A DNA stretch of 64,000 nt from contig CBFFRP010000123.1 in the NCBI GenBank assembly GCA_965644295.1, positions 1 to 64,000 on the forward strand. Direction: 5' to 3'. The notes beneath the pieces are model-generated. The model saw nothing but the letters and a program-made list of their open reading frames with translations. It made no database searches and was not told the origin of the DNA. The position numbers were made by a program, and so were the translations under genes. The DNA comes from Paraphysomonas bandaiensis (taxonomy: Eukaryota > Protista > Chrysophyceae). Positions 4,591 to 64,000 of this stretch are shown here, piece by piece (the first letter of the stretch is position 1; the number at the start of each line of letters is the position of its first letter).

Positions 4591-5423
4591 ATTAACTGGG
4601 TACTGTGTTTGAGATGCACAGTCACCGGTCAATGTGCTTGATATGGCTATACTATACTATGTTAAACATCAGCCCTATATTTGTAATTACAGAATAATGA
4701 AGTCATGGTGGCGTAGTAGCGCTAAAGTAATGCAACATCCAGCAATTATGATAAGAGGGAATAGAAGAAATGGAATAATATTGTATAAGTAGGTCTGTAG
4801 ACCTTTCGAGCTCTCAACATAGTAATCTTTGTGACTATGCTGTATTAGCTTTTTGAATAATATCTTTGTTTACTATTAATATAGGAGGGTTCAGTATGGT
4901 GTAAAGTGTAAAGCAATTGTCAAGGAGAAGCCTCGTGCAACTACTCCTCGAAGTTGCTATTCCCTCATCCCTCAGTATCCTTTTGTGGTTGAGATACACT
5001 TGTTGTAGCTTTTATTGAGATTAGGGGCTTTATTGTTTCGAGTTAATCTCGTACACCTTCTGCGTTACTGTAAAGTGAAATATTAACGAAAGCTCCTCAC
5101 AACTTCGATGTTAATAATTATAATTATTCATTAAAAGTCGGGTAAGAACTATAACTAATACTGTACAGAAAAGGAGTTACACACTAAAATCAAAATCCTA
5201 ATGGTACGTAATTGTCACACATGAGTTCGTACGTATACTTTTCGTCTTGCTAAGGATTCATAAAAAGTATGGGAGTACTTCAAGGTAAGTACTACACCTA
5301 CTAAACTCTATAATCTATGACATACTAAAAATCACTGTTGTGCAAATTCCACACCTGAGCATTTACAAATGCAAATCGCGATATTTGAGGAAACATTATC
5401 ATCGGCTCCTGATCACGCAAACG

Positions 5424-14615: not shown

Positions 14616-17296
14616 CTAAAACTTTGCAAAGTGATCTTGACTGCCAATATAATCCCCCACAAAATCCTCCTCCTCATATTCATCGAAGTTGCTGCTATCA
14701 AGAGGGTTACCGATTGGTGGCGTGTATGGGGCACGGGCGGTGCGTTGGTTGATGGCATTCCAATCGATTGATGCAAAAAAAGGGTCATTCATAATATCCT
14801 TTGTCCCACCATTCAGATTTCCTAAGCGGAACGTAGGGTTGATGGTCAGTAGCTTTTTAACAATTGCCACCAACTGTGGGTCGATCTTAGGAGGAAATGA
14901 AAGATTCTTCTCGGCAGCGACGATATTCTGAAATATTTTGGTCGTGTAGTCAGCCTGAAAAGGAGTGCGTGAGAGATACAACTCATACACCAGGCAACCG
15001 AAGGCCCAGTAGTCTACGCTCTTGTCGTATCCCTTGGACATGACAATCTCTGGGGCCAGGTACTCTGGAGTGCCACAGAGGGTGTATGTCTTGTCTTGTT
15101 TTTGACCATTCTTCATAAACGGAAACTTTTTAGCAAATCCAAAATCGATTACTTTGATATATCCCAAACTATCAATAAGCAAATTCTCAGGTTTAAGGTC
15201 TCTGTACGCTATACTCCTCTCGTGAAGATGCTTGAACGCCAGTAGAACATTCGCTGCATAGAACTTGACTGCGGTCATCTCGAATCCCCCAGCTGTAGAT
15301 CGAGGCACTGTATCAGTCTTCTCATATATGTACGACCACAGTTCGCCTCCTTGAATGAATTCCATCAGCATAAATATCTGATTGGGATGATTATATGTCT
15401 GTAACAGAGCGAGCACAAAAGGGCAACTCGAACATTCAAATAGGAGATTCTTCTCGGCCATTATGTTCTTCTCTTGATGAGAAGCCACCACCTCAGTCTT
15501 GTTCATGCATTTTAGAGCACAAACCGCACCAGACGGTACATGCTGTACCACCTTGACGCGGCCAAAGGTCCCCGTCCCGATGGTCCGCATCATTCGCAAG
15601 TCTTCAAAACGGTAGTCAGTGCGCGGTCCGACGACCTTCGTATCCTCTTCCTCCGCATTGGCATTGGAAGATTCGCGACGAGACATTTCGGTCTTAAGAT
15701 CTTCTTGCACGTCACTAAGCAATGCCTGAAAGTTCTTCCTCTCCAGTACCAGACACTCCACAGGACCAACTGCAATGACATTGGCTTTTCTAGGTTCATT
15801 GGTAATAAGTGCACGCTCTCCAAAAAACTCCTGCGGTGTGAGTCGAATTAGCTCCTCCTCTTTTCCGCCCCCATTTGAGCGTGTACACTTTACCTCGCCC
15901 TCATTAATGATGTAGAACCGCGAGCCCTCTTCGCCCTGCCGAATGATATATGCCTTATCAGGAAAAGCCTGAACCCGCATAACTCCGGCTAGACGTATCA
16001 GCTTGCTCTCCGGAAGACGAGAGAGCAACGGTACACTCTGAAGAATACGAATGCGCATTCGGCGGGCAAGGACATCCTGCACTGGACCGAGGAGCATGTC
16101 GAATTTGTTACGATCCAGGGAAAGACATTTCACTTTGCCCACTGCAATACAATTCGCATGCCGAGACTCATCCAACATCAACGCCATTTCACCAAAGTAG
16201 TCGCCCGCCCGCAGAGTTCTACACATACTGAAATGAAAACAAGATACGGTATCTAATCGCTATGCACTCACAGGAGCTCTATTTCTCGACCACTGGATTT
16301 CAATTGTGTGCACTTTACTTGCCCATCCTCAATAATATAAAAGCAGTCCCCAATATCGCCTTGTCGGATGATATGCTCATCCGGTTCAAAAGAACAGCTC
16401 TCCAGGGCGCCTGCAAGTTTGCTGATCTGGTCGTTGGAGAGAGGATCCAAGAAAGGACATTTCTTGAGGAACTCACAGCGATGCACCATCTTAGAAGAGG
16501 AAGTTGTAGCCAGAATATAACGAAAGGTTCTAATTAACAAAAAGTGAGTTCTAACCTAGAATATATCGCATGTATACCTTAAATCCAGTGCCCATAGCTT
16601 GCATGTGCTTGTTGAGATGACAGAGGCGGCACGTGCGGTGTTGTATATTAGTGCCAGCTCCCCAAAGCATCCGCCTGGGCCATATGTAAAGACCGTTCCT
16701 ACACCCTCTACGCTGGCCTCTGCGCTCCCTGTCTCTAAACAATAGAAAAGGTCCCCCAGATCACCCTGGCGGATAATAACCTCATTCATATCTGAAGTTA
16801 GTGGCCGCATACAATCAATAATTCTGCTCATGTCTTCATCTCCTAGACTCTCAAACAAGTAATGAGCAGAGAGAGCTCCACGCAAAAACTCCCTGGAGGC
16901 CTCGGGTTTGGCGTAGACTGTGAGCTGTCTAGAGGTGTCCGGTGAGTACGCATCCGAGCTGTTGTAGATTTGTACACGGCGAGCTGGCACCTGCTGTTTG
17001 TCCTCTTTACCTACATTAAAGAACAATTAACCATTCCGATATAACTACAACACACATCCAGCATACTAAACATATCGTCGTTATACTCATATATACCTTT
17101 AGCACTTGGTTTATTCGTATGACTTTTAGCCATTGCAGTAGGATCATATCTATTAGGAGTTGATTTCAATCCTTCAACTCCTTCTACTTTATCAGTAGCT
17201 TTATTCTTCTATAAGTGTATGTATCATACATATATATATATATGTATATAAGGGACTTACATTAGAGCTTAAATAGCGTTGATAAAACCGTGACAT
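14616..17296 (-). CDS. Cyclic-nucleotide-dependent protein kinase (PKG architecture: three cNMP-binding domains + AGC kinase)
   Basis: Multi-exon, likely starting MSRFYQ at 17296; three FGExAL..R cassettes; GTGTFG, YRDLKPEN, DFGFAK, TLCGTPEYLAPE; AGC tail SNFDEY. Confidence 0.92.
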
Positions 17297-56774: not shown

Positions 56775-59180
56775 CAGGGCCTGGTAACCATTAATGGCCC
56801 ATTAATGGTAGTCCAGTTCCCGGCAATTATAATGGCATTAATGAAAAATGTCCCGGCAATTATAATGGCCATTAATGGCCCATTAATGGTCTTTAATACC
56901 TACTAACTTAAAGTAGATAGCACCACTCATATAATAGATAGTGCTGTGATCCCTTAATTACTAATTTTTAGTTAACTAGCAGACTGCAATTTTAACTACT
57001 TCTCGCTGCTCTCTACTGGCACATCAGGATCTTCTTGCAGGGCTTCATGGATGGTATAAACACCCCACAACATGTAATTGGCTCGTAGGAATAGCAACGA
57101 TTCTAGACGATATGGATTCATGTTTCTACGCTCAGGCGTCATAATTAACTTTGCACGACTAAAGAGCCTCTCAACAACATTAGATTGTGCTTCGATATGA
57201 AGCAAGCAGCGGTAGTTGGACTCATAGGTACCAAGTCGAGCTCTCTTGGTGACCTCGGCGCTGTCCAGAACACGCTGTGCAAAATCAGCTCCTTCACTCT
57301 CGTCCTCGTTATTTCTGTCGGGTACACCAACCTCCATGGATAAATCCAGTTGCAAATGTCGAACTGCTCTTCTCTCATTGCCTGTCAACTCTCTTTCATC
57401 GTTCCCTTGAATTTTAGCCACTGCCTTCTCAAAATTGGCACTGGCAACAATGCTTGCATTTGGGGAAAGGTATGGATGCAGCTCTGGAAATTCTTGTAGC
57501 AGCATATCAAATAACTGGCGGGCTTGGTACAAATTGGTTCCATCTCTTTGTAAGGCCAGCGTAACACTCTGTAACTTTTCAAGTTGCGTCAAATATTGTT
57601 TCAGATCTCGAAATTTAGCTGGAGTAAGAATCTTATCTTCCAGGGTGCTCGGGAAATTACATTCACCAAGAAAAGGATGCAGTTTTACGTATTTAACCAG
57701 CATGTTGTATGTTGAAGACCACCGAGTTACATTTCTTCTTTCCGGCTTTATGTTTGTCTTCTGCGCAAGCAAACTTGCATTCTTCAGCGTCCTTAGATCC
57801 TTCATCAATGAATCGATTCTTTCAATAATGGTAGTGAGGCCTGTCTGGTTGCAGAAAATATTTGCAATTGCCAAATTCAGTCGATGTGAGTAGAGCAACC
57901 AACCATTGGCTTCTCCATTGATTCAGTCAGTTTGCGATTTACTGAACAGTTATCACACACAAGACAATCGACATTGGCAAGAGTTTTATTGAATACTCGC
58001 AGTTGATTAATGATATGATCTCCGATATCTGCCGCAGTAAATTCAATACCAGGTAAATCGTTTTCGTCCGGTTGCTCTTGAGGTCCGCAGCATAGTAACA
58101 CTCGAGTAACCCCAGCTTTATTTTCCTTGGACCACATTGCGAATATTGCAATATAATGATCTGACATGCTATCGCATGTCCACCCATCAAAAACTAGACC
58201 AAATTTATCTGGTAACATAATACTCAACTTCCTTTCCACGAGTATATGTGTGCGTTGTAAATATTTCATCACCGTCGTAACTGAGATGGGTGCTAAATTG
58301 GTGTTCATCCGAATATACTTATTCTCCACGATAGAAAATGGTTCGTTGTTCATAACTATCCATTGCAGCCACCGAAATAAGTTCCTTGCAGCAGGAGATA
58401 CTTTCTTTCTTACAAAAGACAATATATCGCCCCCGTGAAGTCTTTCACATCCCAAAATTCTCTCGAGTTCCTCTCGCCAAGAAAAATCCGCATGTTTGGT
58501 GCTCTTGGTTATATGATTAACACAACTAGTGTAACCTCGCTTTATATCCTGTTTAAGGCGATCATTGCACAAAGAACAAATATGATACAGAGGATTATCT
58601 GAATCCACTCGAAAGAAGACTCTGTAAATTACACTGCCATCAATTTTTTCGGCCATCATCGTTGCTTAATATGGATATATATACTGTATGGTATAAATAC
58701 AGAGTAAAATATTACTTTGCTTAGTTGTGTACTGCTGTAGCTTCTTTTAACTTTGGGGGAAAATAGTATTTTTATGAATGTCTAGGTAAAATATGCATAT
58801 TTTCAATGATTATTTTAGAGTTTTTGGGGTATATGAGTAGGAATTCCTACGTCGCTATATATAGATATTGCTTGCTCAGGAAACTATTCTCCACATTGAG
58901 AAGATGGTGAACAAAGTTGCCACAAAGTGCCTGTAGAGTTGCATGAACATTGTTGTCTAATATTGCTTAGAGTTTCTTCGGAGTATAGAGGAGATACTAT
59001 ATTCTATTATCTTAAAAACACTCAGTTCTATATATAACAGTACAGATCATTAATGGTAGTCCAGTTACCGGCAATTATAATGGCATTAATGAAAAATGTC
59101 CCGGCAATTATAATGGCATTACCATTAATGGCCCATTAATGGCCATTAATGCCATTACCATTAATGGTTACCAGGCCCTG
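56775..59180 (-). mobile_element. hAT DNA transposon, 2406 bp
   Basis: Perfect 23-bp TIR CAGGGCCTGGTAACCATTAATGG; 8-bp TSD CCCCCGAC (56767-56774, 59181-59188); subterminal CATTAATGG arrays. Confidence 0.95.
56996..58659 (-). pseudogene. hAT transposase with one frameshift near 57893
   Basis: BED-like finger (CSLC..H..H), FDGWT, CDN, C-x-SHRLNL, TRWSS, VERLFS; split over two overlapping ORFs. Confidence 0.88.
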
Positions 59181-59551
59181 CCCCCGACTACTGCTCTTGC
59201 AAAGGAATGAAAAGAACTGCATGCTGTGAGAATTTTCTGCGTTGGTTGCTTCTACTTATTGCCCAAGTAATAATACATTTCAAACAAATTATATAAAGTT
59301 ATGCGTGGCGTTGGAACCGTCAGATACTAGCCATGAAGCGGCACCGTGATCATACTAATGTAGGATAAATATCATAGAGCTAAAAGATAATGCTTCATAG
59401 AGCTAAATGATTCATACTCCTACACTAGTAAAGACATGTTCATCACTGATAATAAATTGCAAAATATAAACAGATGATATATTTACGAAATTGCACTACA
59501 TGCACCTGTCGAATAGTAACGAACGCGCATAAACATCTACACACGTATATT

Positions 59552-62500
59552 TTATACAGTGCCATTGGTTCTTTCTTCAAAGGAGGTAAACTCGTTGGGT
59601 AAAAAACACTCTGACATAACATCAGCGATATCTACATTGCGACTACTTTGACTATTATTACGTGATGCACTTATCATCGGCTCTGACGAAACTTGAGCGA
59701 CATCGGAAGAGTTGTTTGACCCAGTCTCTGGTGACTTACTGCATAGAGGGGTAGCATCCAAAACAATCCCATCAACACTTCTATTCGAAGCTCCAGATGC
59801 CACTAAGCTTTGCCGTTGTTGCTGCCGGAGCAATCTTAGTCTGGCCCGTTTCATTTTCCTCTTGTCCTCTGCATCCCCAGTAGCAATAGAGCATTCACTA
59901 GAAGAGCAAGTCGGAGCGTCGGTGATGTCAATTATTGTCGCAACTACCTGCTCTCTCATTCCGTTGGAGCCAGAGGATAAATCAGGCTTCGCATCTTTGG
60001 GTACGAGCTCTTTATGTCTTTGGAGAGGATCACGTAAAGTGGTATATGGTGCAGGCATGGGCTCTGTTGGACACGGTGGTAGTACTGCAGCCACTTCACC
60101 GCGCACCAGGCTAAGTCCATTACTACTGGAAGATGAATACAGTGCATTAGAAGGCCCTAATAGAGTTGGATAGCTGTAAGGGTTGTCCATAGCTCTGATT
60201 CGTGGTACTGGATCCATTGCTGCCGCCAATCCGTCAAATTCATCATCCCTCTCCGGTATCAACGGGTCATCTCCAACTACATTTCCGACACAGTTCGTGT
60301 CTATTTTTGCACCAAAGTGTTCAACTTCTCGATCTTCGACAGAATCTTCTTCAGCATCTGCCTCGCCCAGAGAAGTGTTCTTGATCTCTTCTGTTGCAAG
60401 CTCCTCTACCAGTCCTGTAAAACAGCACAATAATGATGACAGACAGAAGATATATACACAATAACCTTCGATCGTGGCAGAGAGGGGGGTGATGTCATCG
60501 ATATCTCCGAGCGGATCATCAGCATTAAGATCCACATTTTTGGTGCCTTCAAAAACTTCTCCCAAGGTATTCATTTTTTTCCGCAACATTGGCCACAACA
60601 GGTCATCAATAGTACCCTTAGCAAGAAAATAAAATACGCGGACTTCGGACGTTTGCCCAATGCGATGCGCCCTGTCTTCAGCCTGGATCATTGCCCCGGG
60701 CGTCCAGAACATCTCAGTAAAGAAGACAGTGGAAGCAGCAGTAAGTGTTATAGCCACTCCGGCAGAGGTGATAGCCAGTACTGCGACACGACAAGTACTG
60801 GAAGTCTGAAACTTATCAATTAATGTGAATCTTTCCTGCATATAACTATCACTGAAGAACCCAGACCTTGAATTAACAAACCCACCTTGCTGGGAGTGCT
60901 CCCATCAATACGAATCGATTCAGCTCCACGCTGCCGTAAAAACTTGCTGACAGCGTTCATCACGGAATGATGATGTGCGAATATTATTACCTGCGTAACA
61001 TAAGTCAAAATAATTCATAAATTTTATTTCCTCACTTTTCCCGACATTCTATCATTTAAAAAACTTGAGAGGTGGTCAAAAAACCCATCTAATTTGGCCG
61101 CCCCAGATTCAGTGAACAATTCCATAAGGAGAGACTTTTTTGATTTCTTTTCGTCTTGATATGATGGACGACGAAAGGGTACAGCCGGCACAAAATTATC
61201 AACACTGTGAGCATTCTCGGCAGGGCGCTTCCTACTACTCCTTGACCCGCCCACTCCCTCTAGTTCACTGTCTTGCAGTTGCTGTTGAATACCCCTGTCA
61301 TATCTTAAAATTTCCTCTACTGAACACTGGAAGAACATACCTTAATCGCATCTTCATCTCTTGGCACTTTACTTCAATCCGAATTATTCTACGTTTCTTT
61401 TCAGGGAGTTGATCAAGAATATTCTTTTTAAGGCGACGAATCATTACAGTTCCTAGTAATACCGTATTCAACTCTAACGTGTTGCTGGCCCCTTTATTCA
61501 CACCAAACGACCCACGACCCCGATTTCGACTACAACTGAATTTCATGAGGTGTCAGAAGGCCATTATTACCTACCTGTCACAGTATCGCTTCACAAACTC
61601 CTTTTCACTGGGCCAGTCACTAGGAGCGAGGGCATGTAGCTGCGTGAATAATTCATAGGGGCGGGAGAGGGCCGGAGTGCCTGTGAGCATAACTACCCGA
61701 GGGGCTTTGTCAAGGACAGGCATTAGCGCTTTGGTTCGTTGCGCTTTAGCATTCTTTAAGTAGTGAGATTCATCCACAATTACAACTTTGTATTTCTTAT
61801 CTAGTAGGTACTTTTGTACCTGATTGGGTATGTATTAGATAAATATGTACTAAATATACGAAATACCTTGGACAGTATATTATATGATAGAACAAGGAAC
61901 TTGTGTTCTGAGGCAAGAAGTTCCTTTGGGTTGAGAACGTCGACCACATTAACATCCGACTCAGTAATGAGCTCTGGACTAAGCCAGGATATCAGCTCAG
62001 CCTGTTAGTAATAATTAGCTAAATCATCCGGAGCACAGTAGTGACGAATATGTTACCTTCCAATGATACCGCGCAGATGACGGAGTGACCACCAATACTG
62101 GCCACTCTGACTGATATACTGCAGCAGAGGCAATGGCTTGTATGGTGTTGTGTGTTACTACATATTGTTCACAAACATACAAACTATCCGGAGCGTCTAC
62201 AGATATACAAACAACTTCCGTAATACGACAAGGAATAATCTCACATATGCGACGGTGGGGCCTGGGTGGATTGTCATAACAGCAAGCTGTGTGCGCCTTC
62301 ACAAGATATGGTAGAGAAAACGGACACAGACCAACAGGCAAAACCACCTCTACAATTCGAACATCGTTGTTATTCGACAAAACCGCCGTACCTCCCATAG
62401 ATTGCACTAACTCCGTCAAGTCAGCCATCAAGGCGACTTGCTCTATTGGAATAGATGCAATAGCGGTGCGATATTGCGATGAAACTTTACCACAGACATC

Positions 62501-64000
62501 CATAATTCCTTGTATCACCGCCAAGCGATCCTGCACACCAGCTAAAAGATATGTTCGAGGAATGCAAGCTGTGCTCCCTCCAAGCACAGAGAACAAGAGT
62601 TTCTCCAGTTTCTCACTTCGAATAAAAGTAAACTGCGCTTCATGAACCGAGTATGAGTCAAGGGTATCCATACTGAAACGAAAGTGTTTAAGCCGATCCC
62701 TCTCGCAACCAATCGCGACAGGAATACCTCGTTGTGTTTGCGCTGTATATTTACACAAGCACATACTGGCAACTAGCACTCCTAAAGTGTAAGGATCCAT
62801 TGGAAGTGGGCCAGACTGAGGAAAGTAATTCACCGGCTTCACCATAGGCACCTCCCATCGTGCCTCCCCGGTTTTGCGATCTAAGTAAGCAGCATCGACC
62901 GCACACACACTTCCTCCGGAGAGAGAAACTATCCCGCCCTTGAACATTTGTGTGGTAGACAGAACGATCGACTGTGAACACTCGGAGCTTCCCACAGAAT
63001 ACGAACGATTGACGTGCCACAGGTGGTCGTCAGATACCTCCACCTGTGCTCCGTCAGAAAATCGAACAGTGTACGTCTGGCGGAATCCACGGGGAAATAC
63101 TCCCGTTATCCGAGTCGACCGCCCATTCGAACCAATAACACAATCGCCAACCCGTATGTCACGGAAGGTTGTCCATCCTCCTGGAGTGAGTAAATGACTT
63201 TCCACGGGATGAGCCTTACCTGTGAGTATTAGTAGTCGTAAACTGATTGCGAATTGAATATTCTTCACAATTACCTAGACCCATGTCATCAGCAATGAGA
63301 GCTCGCCCGTGATTCTGCATGACAAATCGTACACCATCCCGCTGTGGTGCCCAATACCCGTTACCATGCCTTTGCTTCAGTTATACACTAACCTGGAATG
63401 GTGCCAAAGTATCGTACAGTCTAGAAGGAATTTGATTTATTAGGGTATCTGCACTTTCATCACTGCCTCCATCCTGCATGTATTAAAATGACACCTAACT
63501 AACATACTGTATTTCAAGCACCTGGGAGGCTATTTGTTTTCTTCTGTGATGTAAATATACCGCGGCAATTGCAGTTCGCGGCAAGGGATCCACCGTCACA
63601 TTAAGAGAAGGTTGAGAGAGCGCAACCTAATTGAATATTAAACAACAAATGAAATATGTATTAAATACTTGTACCCGCAACCGATCGTGAGCACTGATAG
63701 GAAATATCCACTTCTTAGACTCTGCGTCGAACCTAACTCCCGGTACAAGCTTCAGGGTTGATATTACCTGCCCATATATTGACACAATTTCAATAAACAA
63801 TTCGCTCTTACCTCTTTACTGACTATTCGATCTGACTTTGCAGTAAATTCTCGAGAATTAATCAGACTTAAGCTGATGACTGCACGGGGAGATATTCGAG
63901 GAACAAAGGGAGATACACCTAGTATGACAGAATCATGAGAAAATATAGATGTGGTATTCAACAGTGCACCGTAATTATTAGCACTGAAAGGTGCACCATA
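59552..64000 (-). CDS. SMARCAL1: SMARCAL1-like SNF2 annealing helicase (5' end probably beyond window), intein-containing
   Basis: HARP-like VPGVRFDAESKKWIF; LAPFQRDGV; ADDMGLGK[intein]TIQA; VDESH; LTGTP; MIRRLK; IFAHH; RIDGST; QAEDRAHRIGQ; many short introns. Confidence 0.9.
62147..63214 (-). mobile_element. Intein, 356 aa, Ala1, class 3 (WCT) signature, degenerate LAGLIDADG endonuclease
   Basis: In frame between Lys and Thr of Walker A; block A AHPVESHLLTPGGW..IRVGDCV, block B VSDDHLW, block F VVCISVD..DSLY, block G VVTHN/T. Confidence 0.93.

What the first reader, a model, noticed from the sequence alone, without database searches (positions are those of the whole stretch)
62147..63214. 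Class 3 (Ala1, Trp-Cys-Thr) intein in the P-loop of an intron-containing eukaryotic SMARCAL1-like gene
Seen: after splicing out intron 63274-63220 the protein reads ADDMGLGK, then a 356-aa insert, then TIQAIASAAVY. Excising the insert restores SNF2 motif I exactly. The insert begins with Ala, not Cys/Ser, ends His-Asn before Thr+1, and has Trp66 in block B (DHLW), Cys336 at block F4 (VVCISV) and Thr354 in block G (VTHN). Established: this WCT triplet with a non-nucleophilic first residue defines class 3 inteins, which splice via a block-F Cys branched intermediate. They are described mostly from phages and bacteria, often in helicases, including the Deinococcus radiodurans Snf2 intein. The eukaryotic nuclear inteins I know (VMA1, PRP8, RNA polymerase etc.) are canonical class 1. 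Inference: a prokaryote/virus-type intein entered a eukaryotic fork-remodelling gene, so both RNA and protein splicing are needed to assemble the ATPase site. I cannot confirm novelty without a database search.
Basis: partly seen in the sequence, partly recalled or inferred. Interest (0 to 1): 0.95.

Follow-up and report, generated by a model that had tools for sequence, protein, structure and literature searches.

The report
Class 3 intein in diatom SMARCAL1-like gene
A marine diatom's SMARCAL1-like DNA-remodelling ATPase carries a self-excising protein element (a class 3 intein) in its ATP-binding loop, so the gene needs both RNA splicing and protein splicing; the element is real and expressed, but it is a further example of a kind first reported in eukaryotes in 2023.

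Summary
On the minus strand the intron 63274-63220 is removed in cDNA-type contigs. The 1163-base exon 62057-63219, holding the 356-codon insert 63214-62147, stays intact in the mRNA.

The insert splits SNF2 motif I as GLGK|...|TIQ. It has every class 3 signature: Ala1, His64/Trp66, Cys336, Thr354-His355-Asn356 and Thr+1. Its closest solved relatives by sequence are class 3 DnaB inteins. Its predicted fold is a full intein with a LAGLIDADG endonuclease domain. Both endonuclease catalytic acids are lost, so the element is probably immobile.

The genome looks like a marine diatom (silicon transporter genes). It holds exactly three such inteins, all at the same site of three SNF2 paralogs: this SMARCAL1/HARP-like gene, SRCAP/SWR1 and a zf-PARP RAD16-like gene. 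Together with fragments from other intron-bearing assemblies they form one clade, subdivided by host gene. That points to old paralog spread followed by vertical descent.

Protein splicing itself is inferred, not shown.

Class 3 P-loop inteins in a eukaryote were published for Anaeramoeba in 2023 (PMC10710043). This scan has already reported the RAD16-like sibling on other DNA of this genome. Verdict: a new member of a known kind.

Side observation: 18 of 26 SNF2 paralogs carry a short intron within 12 nt of the intein site.

The parts
59552..64000 (-). Host gene, SMARCAL1/HARP-like SNF2 ATPase. It has 14 exons. The ATG lies at 64258 on the same contig, beyond the window, and the stop codon ends at 59552. 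The precursor is 1356 aa and the extein 1000 aa.
   Evidence: Gene model built from 13 RNA joints. Pfam gives SNF2-rel_dom, Helicase_C and a partial HARP match on single exons. The contig C123 is 523 kb.
63220..63274 (-). Spliceosomal intron (55 nt, GT..AG, phase 1 in the second Gly codon of GLGK), 5 nt upstream of the intein insertion point.
   Evidence: Skipped in RNA contigs X8 and X11. Exact ends.
62057..63219 (-). Exon 7 (1163 nt): 5 nt that complete Gly-Lys, the whole intein, and 90 nt of C-extein.
   Evidence: Unbroken in X8 record 15, piece 62056-63215.
62147..63214 (-). Class 3 intein, 356 aa (precursor residues 250-605).
62930..63214 (-). N-terminal Hint half (about residues 1-95), with Ala1 and block B His64/Trp66 (63025-63017).
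   Evidence: pLDDT 93-98 over residues 1-70. Aligned to 6bs8 residues 5-77. His64 is in 181/181 and Trp66 in 178/181 sequences.
62270..62842 (-). LAGLIDADG-type endonuclease domain (about residues 125-315) with the fold kept and the active site lost.
   Evidence: Foldseek hits PI-SceI at 1e-12, the TliVMA/PhoVMA inteins and I-DmoI. Low-confidence stretches at 96-108, 157-160 and 183-194.
62759..62797 (-). LAGLIDADG motif 1 remnant (residues 140-152, DPYTLGVLVASMC). The family consensus LGDG Asp is Ser150 here.
   Evidence: Alignment A1 columns.
62489..62527 (-). LAGLIDADG motif 2 remnant (residues 230-242, RLAVIQGIMDVCG). The family consensus DTDG catalytic Asp is Cys241 here.
   Evidence: The Asp is kept in 47 of the 48 non-eukaryote-like rows (one of which, P0037, lies on a eukaryote-type contig) and is lost in all 8 eukaryote-like rows.
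62147..62218 (-). C-terminal Hint blocks F and G (residues 333-356): Cys336 (F4, 62209-62207), Ile337, Asp340, Tyr346 (F15), Thr354, His355, Asn356.
   Evidence: Cys336 aligns with the block F Cys (residue 118) of 6bs8. Cys336 is in 181/181, Thr354 in 179, His355 in 177 and Asn356 in 180 sequences. pLDDT 90-98.
62144..62146 (-). Thr+1, the first C-extein residue and the Thr of GKT.
   Evidence: The +1 residue is Thr in 147 and Ser in 26 of 178 family members.
62002..62056 (-). Next spliceosomal intron downstream (55 nt).
   Evidence: RNA joints in X8, X11 and X14.

Best explanation
The insert is a class 3 intein in a nuclear diatom gene. It combines a Hint splicing domain with a degenerate LAGLIDADG endonuclease domain. 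It sits between Lys and Thr of the Walker A / SNF2 motif I (GLGK|T) of a SMARCAL1/HARP-like ATPase.

Shown: the pre-mRNA loses 13 short introns, and the 1068-nt intein sequence stays in the mRNA, so a 1356-aa precursor is encoded.

Inferred, by analogy with the MP-Be DnaB, Dra Snf2 and Msm DnaBi1 inteins:
1. Cys336 (block F4) attacks the Lys249-Ala250 peptide bond and forms a thioester branched intermediate.
2. [quoted passage not shown]
3. Asn356 cyclises and releases the intein.
4. An O-to-N shift seals GLGK-TIQ, giving a 1000-aa ATPase with an intact P-loop.

The endonuclease has lost both catalytic acids, so the element no longer homes. It is inherited vertically and kept because losing splicing would kill the ATPase. 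It shares an ancestor with two sister inteins at the same site of the SRCAP/SWR1 and zf-PARP RAD16-like genes of this genome. That implies one ancient entry from the phage/bacterial P-loop intein pool, followed by spread among SNF2 paralogs.
For: - Sequence and boundaries.
- Class 3 relatives by sequence: 6bs8 at 1.1e-9 and 6rix/6riy at 1e-8 to 2e-8, with Cys336 aligned to the 6bs8 block F Cys.
- PHROG families of intein-bearing terminases and DnaB-type proteins, down to 1.8e-16.
- Family statistics: 171 of 178 related inteins lack a residue-1 nucleophile, about 174 end in THN, 173 have Thr or Ser at +1, and 127 follow GK.
- The catalytic columns are invariant or nearly so, and all are present here.
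- AF2 model with pLDDT 84.5 and pTM 0.87. It matches PI-SceI and other endonuclease-bearing inteins and, for the Hint part, class 3 DnaB inteins at 23-38% identity.
- mRNA keeps the intein and drops the introns. The ORF is complete at 1356 aa.
- Composition is host-like: GC 48.0 vs 46.1%, GC3 42.7 vs 39.6%.
- Between two related organisms the intein shows 5 non-synonymous changes, all in residues 156-304, and none in the Hint blocks. The extein shows 3 non-synonymous to 7 synonymous.
- Exactly three such inteins in the genome.
- Nine eukaryote-like inteins form one side of a branch (SH-aLRT 94), with sub-clades that follow the host gene.
- Endonuclease catalytic Asp residues are lost in all 8 eukaryote-like rows.
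Against: - No protein-level evidence: neither the spliced product, the free intein nor a branched intermediate has been observed.
- Pfam's own intein models barely see it (Hom_end_hint 19 bits against a cut-off of 32; no Intein_splicing hit). Classification therefore rests on phmmer, alignment and fold.
- The RNA evidence comes from assembled contigs, two of them from runs whose RNA label is a guess. Their intron-less structure is what argues for cDNA.
- The selection signal rests on only 18 substitutions.
- Tree support is SH-aLRT only, branches are long, and only the best 150 representatives were sampled.
Confidence: 0.85

Rival explanations
1. The intein has been exapted as a conditional switch. 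It still splices, but it is retained in three chromatin and DNA-repair ATPases because splicing of the P-loop is gated by redox state or metal ions through the catalytic Cys336. This would parallel the class 3 Msm DnaBi1 intein, which is an oxidative-stress and zinc sensor. This reading adds to the best explanation and does not exclude it.
For: The closest solved relative is Msm DnaBi1, which is reported as stress-responsive (PMC6195587, PMC7360933; abstracts). The inteins have persisted with dead endonucleases in three genes and several species. The Hint blocks show no amino-acid change between two organisms.
Against: Persistence is explained just as well by the lethality of imprecise loss inside a P-loop. 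No condition-dependent data exist. The endonuclease domain is drifting, not being refashioned.
Confidence: 0.12
2. The intein is a splicing-dead relic. The insert no longer splices, and the gene product is either inactive or works with a 356-aa insert in its P-loop.
For: No protein evidence for splicing. The endonuclease part is clearly decaying. A second, intein-free HARP-like SNF2 paralog exists (C283) and could cover the function.
Against: Every catalytic and structural residue that mutagenesis showed to matter in MP-Be DnaB is intact: His B10, Trp B12, Cys F4, Ile F5, Asp F9, aromatic F15, Thr G5, Asn G7 and Thr+1. The ORF is open over 1356 codons and expressed. Extein substitutions are mostly synonymous. 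The same pattern holds in two sister inteins and in other species.
Confidence: 0.07
3. The insert is an artefact: bacterial or phage contamination, a chimeric assembly, or a very recent horizontal insertion.
For: The nearest sequence relatives outside the eukaryote-like clade are in proteins typical of phages and bacteria.
Against: The insert lies in-frame inside one exon, flanked by confirmed spliceosomal introns, on a 523-kb contig. It is held by runs of at least five organism labels and 14 studies, including poly(A) metatranscriptomes. GC and GC3 equal the host's. Best identity to any representative is only 33-46%.
Confidence: 0.01
4. The insert is removed at the RNA level, as a long intron or an alternative exon part, so no protein splicing is needed.
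For: The exon begins with GTAAG, which resembles a 5' splice site.
Against: cDNA-type contigs from two organisms are collinear with the genome across the whole insert while skipping every neighbouring intron. There is no AG at the insert's 3' end. The 356-codon frame is open and conserved.
Confidence: 0.01

Closest known systems
Anaeramoeba 'cluster 1' class 3 inteins (Gallot-Lavallee et al. 2023, PNAS, PMC10710043)
   Same: These are nuclear eukaryotic genes with atypical N-terminal residues and apparent class 3 signatures. All are inserted in P-loops and they spread among non-allelic hosts. That organism also has inteins in HARP/SMARCAL1 and in an SNF2 protein. Introns were noted near intein sites in paralogs.
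   Different: The lineage differs: an anaerobic amoeba against a photosynthetic marine diatom. Here there are only three inteins, all in SNF2 paralogs, all with dead endonucleases, and grouped by host gene, which points to old vertical descent.
Deinococcus radiodurans Snf2 intein and the many phage/bacterial SNF2 P-loop inteins
   Same: They share the same insertion point (..D/E-x-G-L-G-K | ... T-H-N | T-x-Q). 61 of the 178 related inteins sampled sit in SNF2-like GLGK sites. The WCT triplet and the Hint plus LAGLIDADG architecture are the same.
   Different: Identity is only 33-46%. Nearly all the prokaryotic and phage members keep the LAGLIDADG catalytic Asp of motif 2 (47 of 48). Their hosts have no spliceosomal introns.
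Mycobacteriophage Bethlehem DnaB intein (class 3 prototype) and Msm/Mch DnaBi1 (PDB 6bs8, 6rix)
   Same: The numbering is almost superimposable: His65/Trp67/Cys320/Thr339/His340/Asn341 against His64/Trp66/Cys336/Thr354/His355/Asn356. Thr+1 is shared. These are the best PDB sequence hits.
   Different: The host is DnaB, not SNF2. The DnaBi1 structures are mini-inteins without an endonuclease domain. Their mechanism was shown biochemically, whereas here it is inferred.
PI-SceI (yeast VMA1 intein)
   Same: It is the best overall fold match (Foldseek 1e-12, TM about 0.6). It is also a nuclear eukaryotic intein with a LAGLIDADG domain.
   Different: It is class 1 (Cys1 nucleophile, no WCT triplet), its endonuclease is active, and sequence identity is 12-14%.

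Membership tests
Class 3 inteins (Tori et al. 2010, PMC2807308) | Non-nucleophilic residue at intein position 1 | tested here: met
   Ala1 (GCT, 63214-63212). Non-nucleophilic in 171 of 178 relatives.
Class 3 inteins (Tori et al. 2010, PMC2807308) | WCT triplet: Trp at block B12, Cys at block F4, Thr at block G5 | tested here: met
   Trp66, Cys336 and Thr354. These columns hold 178, 181 and 179 of 181 sequences. Cys336 aligns with the block F Cys of 6bs8.
Class 3 inteins (Tori et al. 2010, PMC2807308) | Thr or Ser as first C-extein residue; C-terminal His-Asn | tested here: met
   His355-Asn356 | Thr+1. Definition taken.
Class 3 inteins (Tori et al. 2010, PMC2807308) | Hint fold | tested here: met
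   AF2 model with pLDDT above 90 in the Hint blocks. Foldseek matches inteins only, including class 3 structures.
Class 3 inteins (Tori et al. 2010, PMC2807308) | Obligate block F Cys nucleophile and block F branched intermediate (biochemical) | not testable with these tools
   Needs a C336A mutant and thiol-lability assays on an expressed precursor.
Active LAGLIDADG homing endonuclease | Two LAGLIDADG helices, each ending in a catalytic Asp/Glu | tested here: not met
   Ser150 and Cys241 stand where the family has Asp. The same loss is seen in all 8 eukaryote-like relatives. The fold is retained.
SNF2-family ATPase | SNF2-rel_dom with motifs I (GxGKT, after excision), II (DESH), III, and Helicase_C | tested here: met
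   Pfam on single exons: SNF2-rel_dom 26.3 bits and Helicase_C 34.8 bits. PDB hits are to SNF2 remodelers.
SMARCAL1/HARP subfamily | HARP domain directly N-terminal of the ATPase | tested here: inconclusive
   The HARP profile matches positions 10-41 of 55 on one 31-aa exon at 19 bits, against a cut-off of 25. Only two loci in the genome give any HARP signal, and both lie upstream of an SNF2 ATPase. The domain is split over three exons, so it could not be scored whole.
Spliceosomal intron (alternative identity of the insert) | Absent from mature mRNA; GT..AG ends | tested here: not met
   The insert is retained in intron-less contigs. There is no AG at its 3' end.

The most novel reading that the evidence does not exclude
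The cluster of short spliceosomal introns inside the motif I codons (G-L-G-K) of this diatom's SNF2 paralogs may be a footprint of the P-loop-targeting homing endonuclease that once drove these inteins. 18 of the 26 paralogs examined have such an intron, 0 to 12 nt from the intein insertion point. One sits exactly at K|T in an intein-free gene. On this reading the introns were gained at, or selected for disrupting, the endonuclease's recognition site. Spliceosomal introns would then have served as immunity against a promiscuous intein, and the three surviving inteins are what remained once the endonuclease died.
Probability: 0.12. Interest if true: 0.8.

Novelty: new member of a known kind. 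Interest (0 to 1): 0.5.

Why it matters
- It extends class 3 (block F cysteine) inteins from one anaerobic amoeba genus to diatoms, which are ecologically dominant, cultivable and genetically tractable algae.
- It shows that such inteins can become long-term vertical residents of nuclear genes. The signs are host-like composition, dead endonucleases, flanking introns and, in a sister copy, an intron inside the intein.
- Three ATPases (a SMARCAL1-like fork remodeler, the H2A.Z-depositing SRCAP/SWR1 and a RAD16-like repair factor) would have ATP-binding loops that exist only after protein splicing. This gives a natural system for asking whether eukaryotic cells use intein splicing as a post-translational control point.
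- It also offers new class 3 intein sequences for protein engineering.
- The motif I intron cluster, if linked to the endonuclease, would bear on how introns are gained.

Tried and rejected
- Pfam and NCBIfam scans of the insert gave only sub-threshold hits. The Pfam Intein_splicing model finds nothing in the genome. Standard intein HMMs therefore miss this family, and this is not evidence against an intein.
- The supplement of the Anaeramoeba paper is not held. I could not check whether its SMARCAL1 intein is class 3, nor add its sequences to the tree.
- PDB sequence searches with host exons could not settle the SNF2 subfamily. The Atlas look-up of a homolog's N-terminus mostly pointed to unnamed clusters and to phage HARP/SNF2 clusters.
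- Rejected readings: contamination or chimera, removal at the RNA level, and a recently acquired mobile intein (the endonuclease is dead and the composition ameliorated).
- The 'AGGTAA at both ends' of the adjacent intron is mostly forced by the Leu-Gly-Lys codons plus the splice consensus. I do not count it as evidence of a duplication. The motif I introns of the paralogs share no obvious sequence similarity by eye, which argues against a recent introner burst.
- No complex-prediction job was sent, because no binding claim is made.
Full report
**1. Observation**

The minus strand of 61500-64000 reads ...HGRALIADDMGLG. A 55-nt GT..AG intron follows (63274-63220), cutting after the first base of a Gly codon. 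Next come GT-AAG (Gly-Lys) and an open frame of 356 codons from GCT (Ala, 63214) to AAC (Asn, 62147). After that comes ACC ATA CAA... (TIQAIASAAVY).

The coordinates are exact.

**2. Is the insert in the RNA?**

I laid public contigs on 59500-64000.
- One 4253-nt contig (X8 record 15, a related organism label) and several from X11 (same organism label as the window) skip 13 intervals. All have CT..AC ends on the plus strand, which is GT..AG on the gene strand. They include 63220-63274 and 62002-62056.
- The exon between these two introns, 62057-63219, is covered in one unbroken piece (62056-63215) with 8 base differences and no gaps.
- The X8 and X11 run labels are guesses. A contig that lacks 13 introns is nonetheless cDNA in structure.
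- Labelled poly(A) metatranscriptomes from the sea show the same downstream joints. One of their contigs lies inside the insert (62797-62952).

The insert is therefore transcribed, is not removed with the introns, and occurs in nature. The stretch is held by runs from at least five organism labels and 14 studies.

**3. Gene model and organism**

Using the joints and 4 kb more of the same contig, the gene has 14 exons, with the ATG at 64258 and the stop codon ending at 59552. It encodes 1356 aa, with the insert at residues 250-605. The extein is 1000 aa.

- Single exons match Pfam SNF2-rel_dom and Helicase_C. One 31-aa exon upstream of the ATPase matches the middle of the HARP profile at 19 bits, below the cut-off of 25.
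- Genome-wide, only this locus and one other (C283, also upstream of an SNF2 ATPase) give any HARP signal.
- 'SMARCAL1/HARP-like' is therefore reasonable but not proven.
- The assembly is 62.6 Mb in 669 contigs, and this contig is 523 kb. It has many silicon-transporter (SIT) loci and the runs are marine, so the organism is most likely a diatom.

**4. What the insert is**

*Sequence searches*
- phmmer against PDB sequences finds only inteins. The best are the class 3 DnaB inteins of M. smegmatis (6bs8, 1.1e-9) and M. chimaera (6rix/6riy), followed by gp41-1.
- The C-terminal alignment places Cys336 on Cys118 of 6bs8.
- PHROGs gives intein-bearing terminase, DnaB-loader and primase families.
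- An exhaustive HMMER search of 1.84 billion representatives gives 12,793 hits, 352 of them at E<=1e-30. The best are only 33-46% identical.

*The family*

From the best 150 proteins I cut out 178 related inteins.
- 171 start with a non-nucleophile (Ala 69, Gly 38, Pro 28...).
- About 174 end in Thr-His-Asn.
- 173 have Thr or Ser at +1.
- 127 follow Gly-Lys, meaning they sit in P-loops.
- 61 sit in SNF2-like ..GLGK sites.
- In the 181-row alignment, His64 and Cys336 are invariant. Trp66, Thr354, His355 and Asn356 are present in 177-180 rows.

These are exactly the criteria of class 3 inteins in Tori et al. 2010. That paper also notes that such inteins sit in helicase-type proteins (DnaB, RecG, SNF2, terminase), mostly in P-loops. 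Block F residues found important there (Ile F5, Asp F9, aromatic F15) are Ile337, Asp340 and Tyr346 here.

*Fold*

An AlphaFold2 model built on a 56-row alignment has pLDDT 84.5 and pTM 0.87.
- Foldseek's best matches are full-length endonuclease-bearing inteins: PI-SceI at 1e-12, the TliVMA/PhoVMA inteins and PI-PfuI.
- The class 3 DnaB inteins match the Hint part at 23-38% identity.
- I-DmoI matches the middle domain.

**5. Endonuclease status**

Of the 48 rows of alignment A1 outside the eukaryote-like set, most have LGDG, ADG or ANG-type sequences at LAGLIDADG motif 1. Motif 2 is D-x-D-G in 47 of the 48.

The window intein has Ser150 and Cys241 at the two catalytic positions. All eight eukaryote-like relatives have also lost the motif 2 Asp and lack the motif 1 Asp. 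The replacing residues differ between host-gene sub-clades, which suggests separate decay after the spread.

Between the window and a related organism's transcript:
- The intein carries 8 substitutions. Five are non-synonymous and all fall in residues 156-304.
- There are no amino-acid changes in the Hint blocks.
- The extein has 3 non-synonymous and 7 synonymous changes.

The numbers are small. They are consistent with a drifting endonuclease and a constrained splicing domain.

**6. Sister inteins and history**

The genome holds exactly three matches to this intein or to the family profile, and none to Pfam Intein_splicing.
- *C125:130017-130991* sits at ..ADEMGLGK|AQP...THN|TIQ of a gene whose C-lobe matches SRCAP at 7e-86 and SWR1 at 9e-78.
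- *C218:324865-325878* sits at the same site of a zf-PARP + SNF2 (RAD16-like) gene. Its coding sequence is interrupted six codons before its end by a 51-nt GT..AG intron with an in-frame stop. Removing the intron restores ..HLYVTDN-YIVTHN. A related ORF from another assembly breaks at the same place (P0031).

Earlier agents of this scan reported that copy and its nested intron. I reached them independently.

In an IQ-TREE tree of 57 inteins, the nine eukaryote-like sequences are one side of a branch (SH-aLRT 94). A FastTree run on 181 rows gave 99 for a five-row clade holding the three genome copies plus P0028 and P0031. They divide by host:
- window + P0028 (92). P0028 comes from an intron-bearing SMARCAL1-like gene of another assembly with the same phase 1 intron.
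- C218 + P0031 (88).
- C125 + four fragments that all end ..THN|TIQ followed by an intron-like read-through (94).

The intein's GC and GC3 equal those of the extein. The simplest history is one old entry from the phage/bacterial P-loop intein pool, spread to three SNF2 paralogs while the endonuclease still worked, then vertical descent and endonuclease decay.

Another SMARCAL1-like gene on a eukaryote-type contig (P0037/L009) has a class 3 intein at the same site. This one starts with Met and keeps the Asp of both LAGLIDADG motifs. It falls outside the clade with weak support.

**7. Mechanism**

What is shown is the precursor-encoding mRNA and the conserved catalytic set. The chemistry is inferred from MP-Be DnaB:
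1. Cys336 attacks the Lys-Ala bond.
2. The N-extein is transferred to Thr+1.
3. Asn356 cyclises.
4. An acyl shift seals the P-loop.

Without splicing, the P-loop is split by 356 residues, so ATPase function should depend on it.

**8. Novelty**

- Green et al. 2018 list no class 3, SNF2 or diatom nuclear inteins.
- Gallot-Lavallee et al. 2023 state that class 3 inteins were until then known only from bacteria and phages. They describe them in Anaeramoeba, all in P-loops of unrelated proteins. They also report inteins in HARP/SMARCAL1 and in an SNF2 protein, and introns near intein sites in paralogs.
- I found no paper on diatoms.

This is a new lineage and a new set of hosts for a known kind, not a new kind. 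The scan had already found the sibling copy in this genome.

**9. Side observation**

I examined motif I in 23 intein-free SNF2 paralogs.
- 15 have a predicted short GT..AG intron inside the G-L-G-K codons.
- Eight of these are at -5 nt, phase 1, the position of the window's intron. The rest are at -4, -6, -11 (three), -12, and exactly at K|T (C255).
- Six have no intron by the splice scan (five plus C362). C182 reads through GCGKT uninterrupted. Two are unresolved.
- The three intein-bearing genes have introns at -5, -6 and -6.
- At the gene's own intron density (13 per 4.07 kb) about one such case in 26 would be expected.
- By eye the introns share no obvious sequence similarity; no pairwise comparison was run.
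- Some paralogs are recent duplicates, and the paralog introns are predicted from sequence only.

The candidate explanations, which I could not separate, are an ancestral SNF2 intron, a proto-splice site created by the Leu-Gly-Lys codons (..TAG|GTAAG..), and gain at or selection against the endonuclease target. In any case, the intron next to this intein is not special to intein-bearing genes.

Noticed in passing
G000 SNF2 paralogs, e.g. C128:118353-118375, C217:121693-121715, C255:59826-59848, C297:~540600-540650, C249:~15957-16014; window 63220-63274: 18 of 26 SNF2 paralogs, including all 3 with inteins, have a short GT..AG intron 0-12 nt upstream of the K|T intein insertion point of motif I. 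Nine are at the same -5 phase 1 position. C255 has one exactly at K|T. About one such case would be expected from the gene's intron density. The paralog introns are predicted from sequence only.
   Followed up: partly
G000:C125:130017-130991 (+) (L007:6018-6992): A second class 3 intein (325 aa, Ala1, ..FIVTHN|TIQ) sits in motif I of the SRCAP/SWR1 ortholog. Introns lie 6 nt before it and 9 nt after it. Both endonuclease acids are lost.
   Followed up: yes
G000:C218:324865-325878 (-) (L006:5863-6879, intron L006:5812-5862): A third class 3 intein (345 aa) sits in a zf-PARP + SNF2 (RAD16-like) gene. A 51-nt spliceosomal intron lies inside the intein ORF, six codons before its end. The same break occurs in P0031 from another assembly. 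This scan has already reported it.
   Followed up: yes
L003:17-1288 (G000:C125, upstream part of the SWR1-like gene): The N-terminal region of the SWR1-like gene holds more than three tandem copies of a 327-nt (109-aa) acidic, Ser/Asp/Glu-rich repeat.
   Followed up: no
L009:2831-5152 (logan SRR31411007 contig; protein P0037): A SMARCAL1-like gene of another organism, on a contig carrying a 785-aa HSP90 gene and a frame break at about 5147-5213 that suggests an intron, has a class 3 intein at the same GLGK|T site. It begins with Met and keeps the Asp of both LAGLIDADG motifs (..LADAS.., ..MDADG..; Pfam LAGLIDADG_3 at 1.5e-6). It may be a still-mobile relative.
   Followed up: partly
G000:C283:29322-30419 (-): A second HARP-like + SNF2 gene (motif I GDEMGCGKT) has no intein but a predicted intron at -12. 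It is a possible intein-free paralog of the window's host.
   Followed up: no
window 57877-58659 (-): A 260-aa ORF just downstream of the host gene has a Cys/His-rich N-terminus that looks like a transposase remnant. It has no Pfam match.
   Followed up: partly
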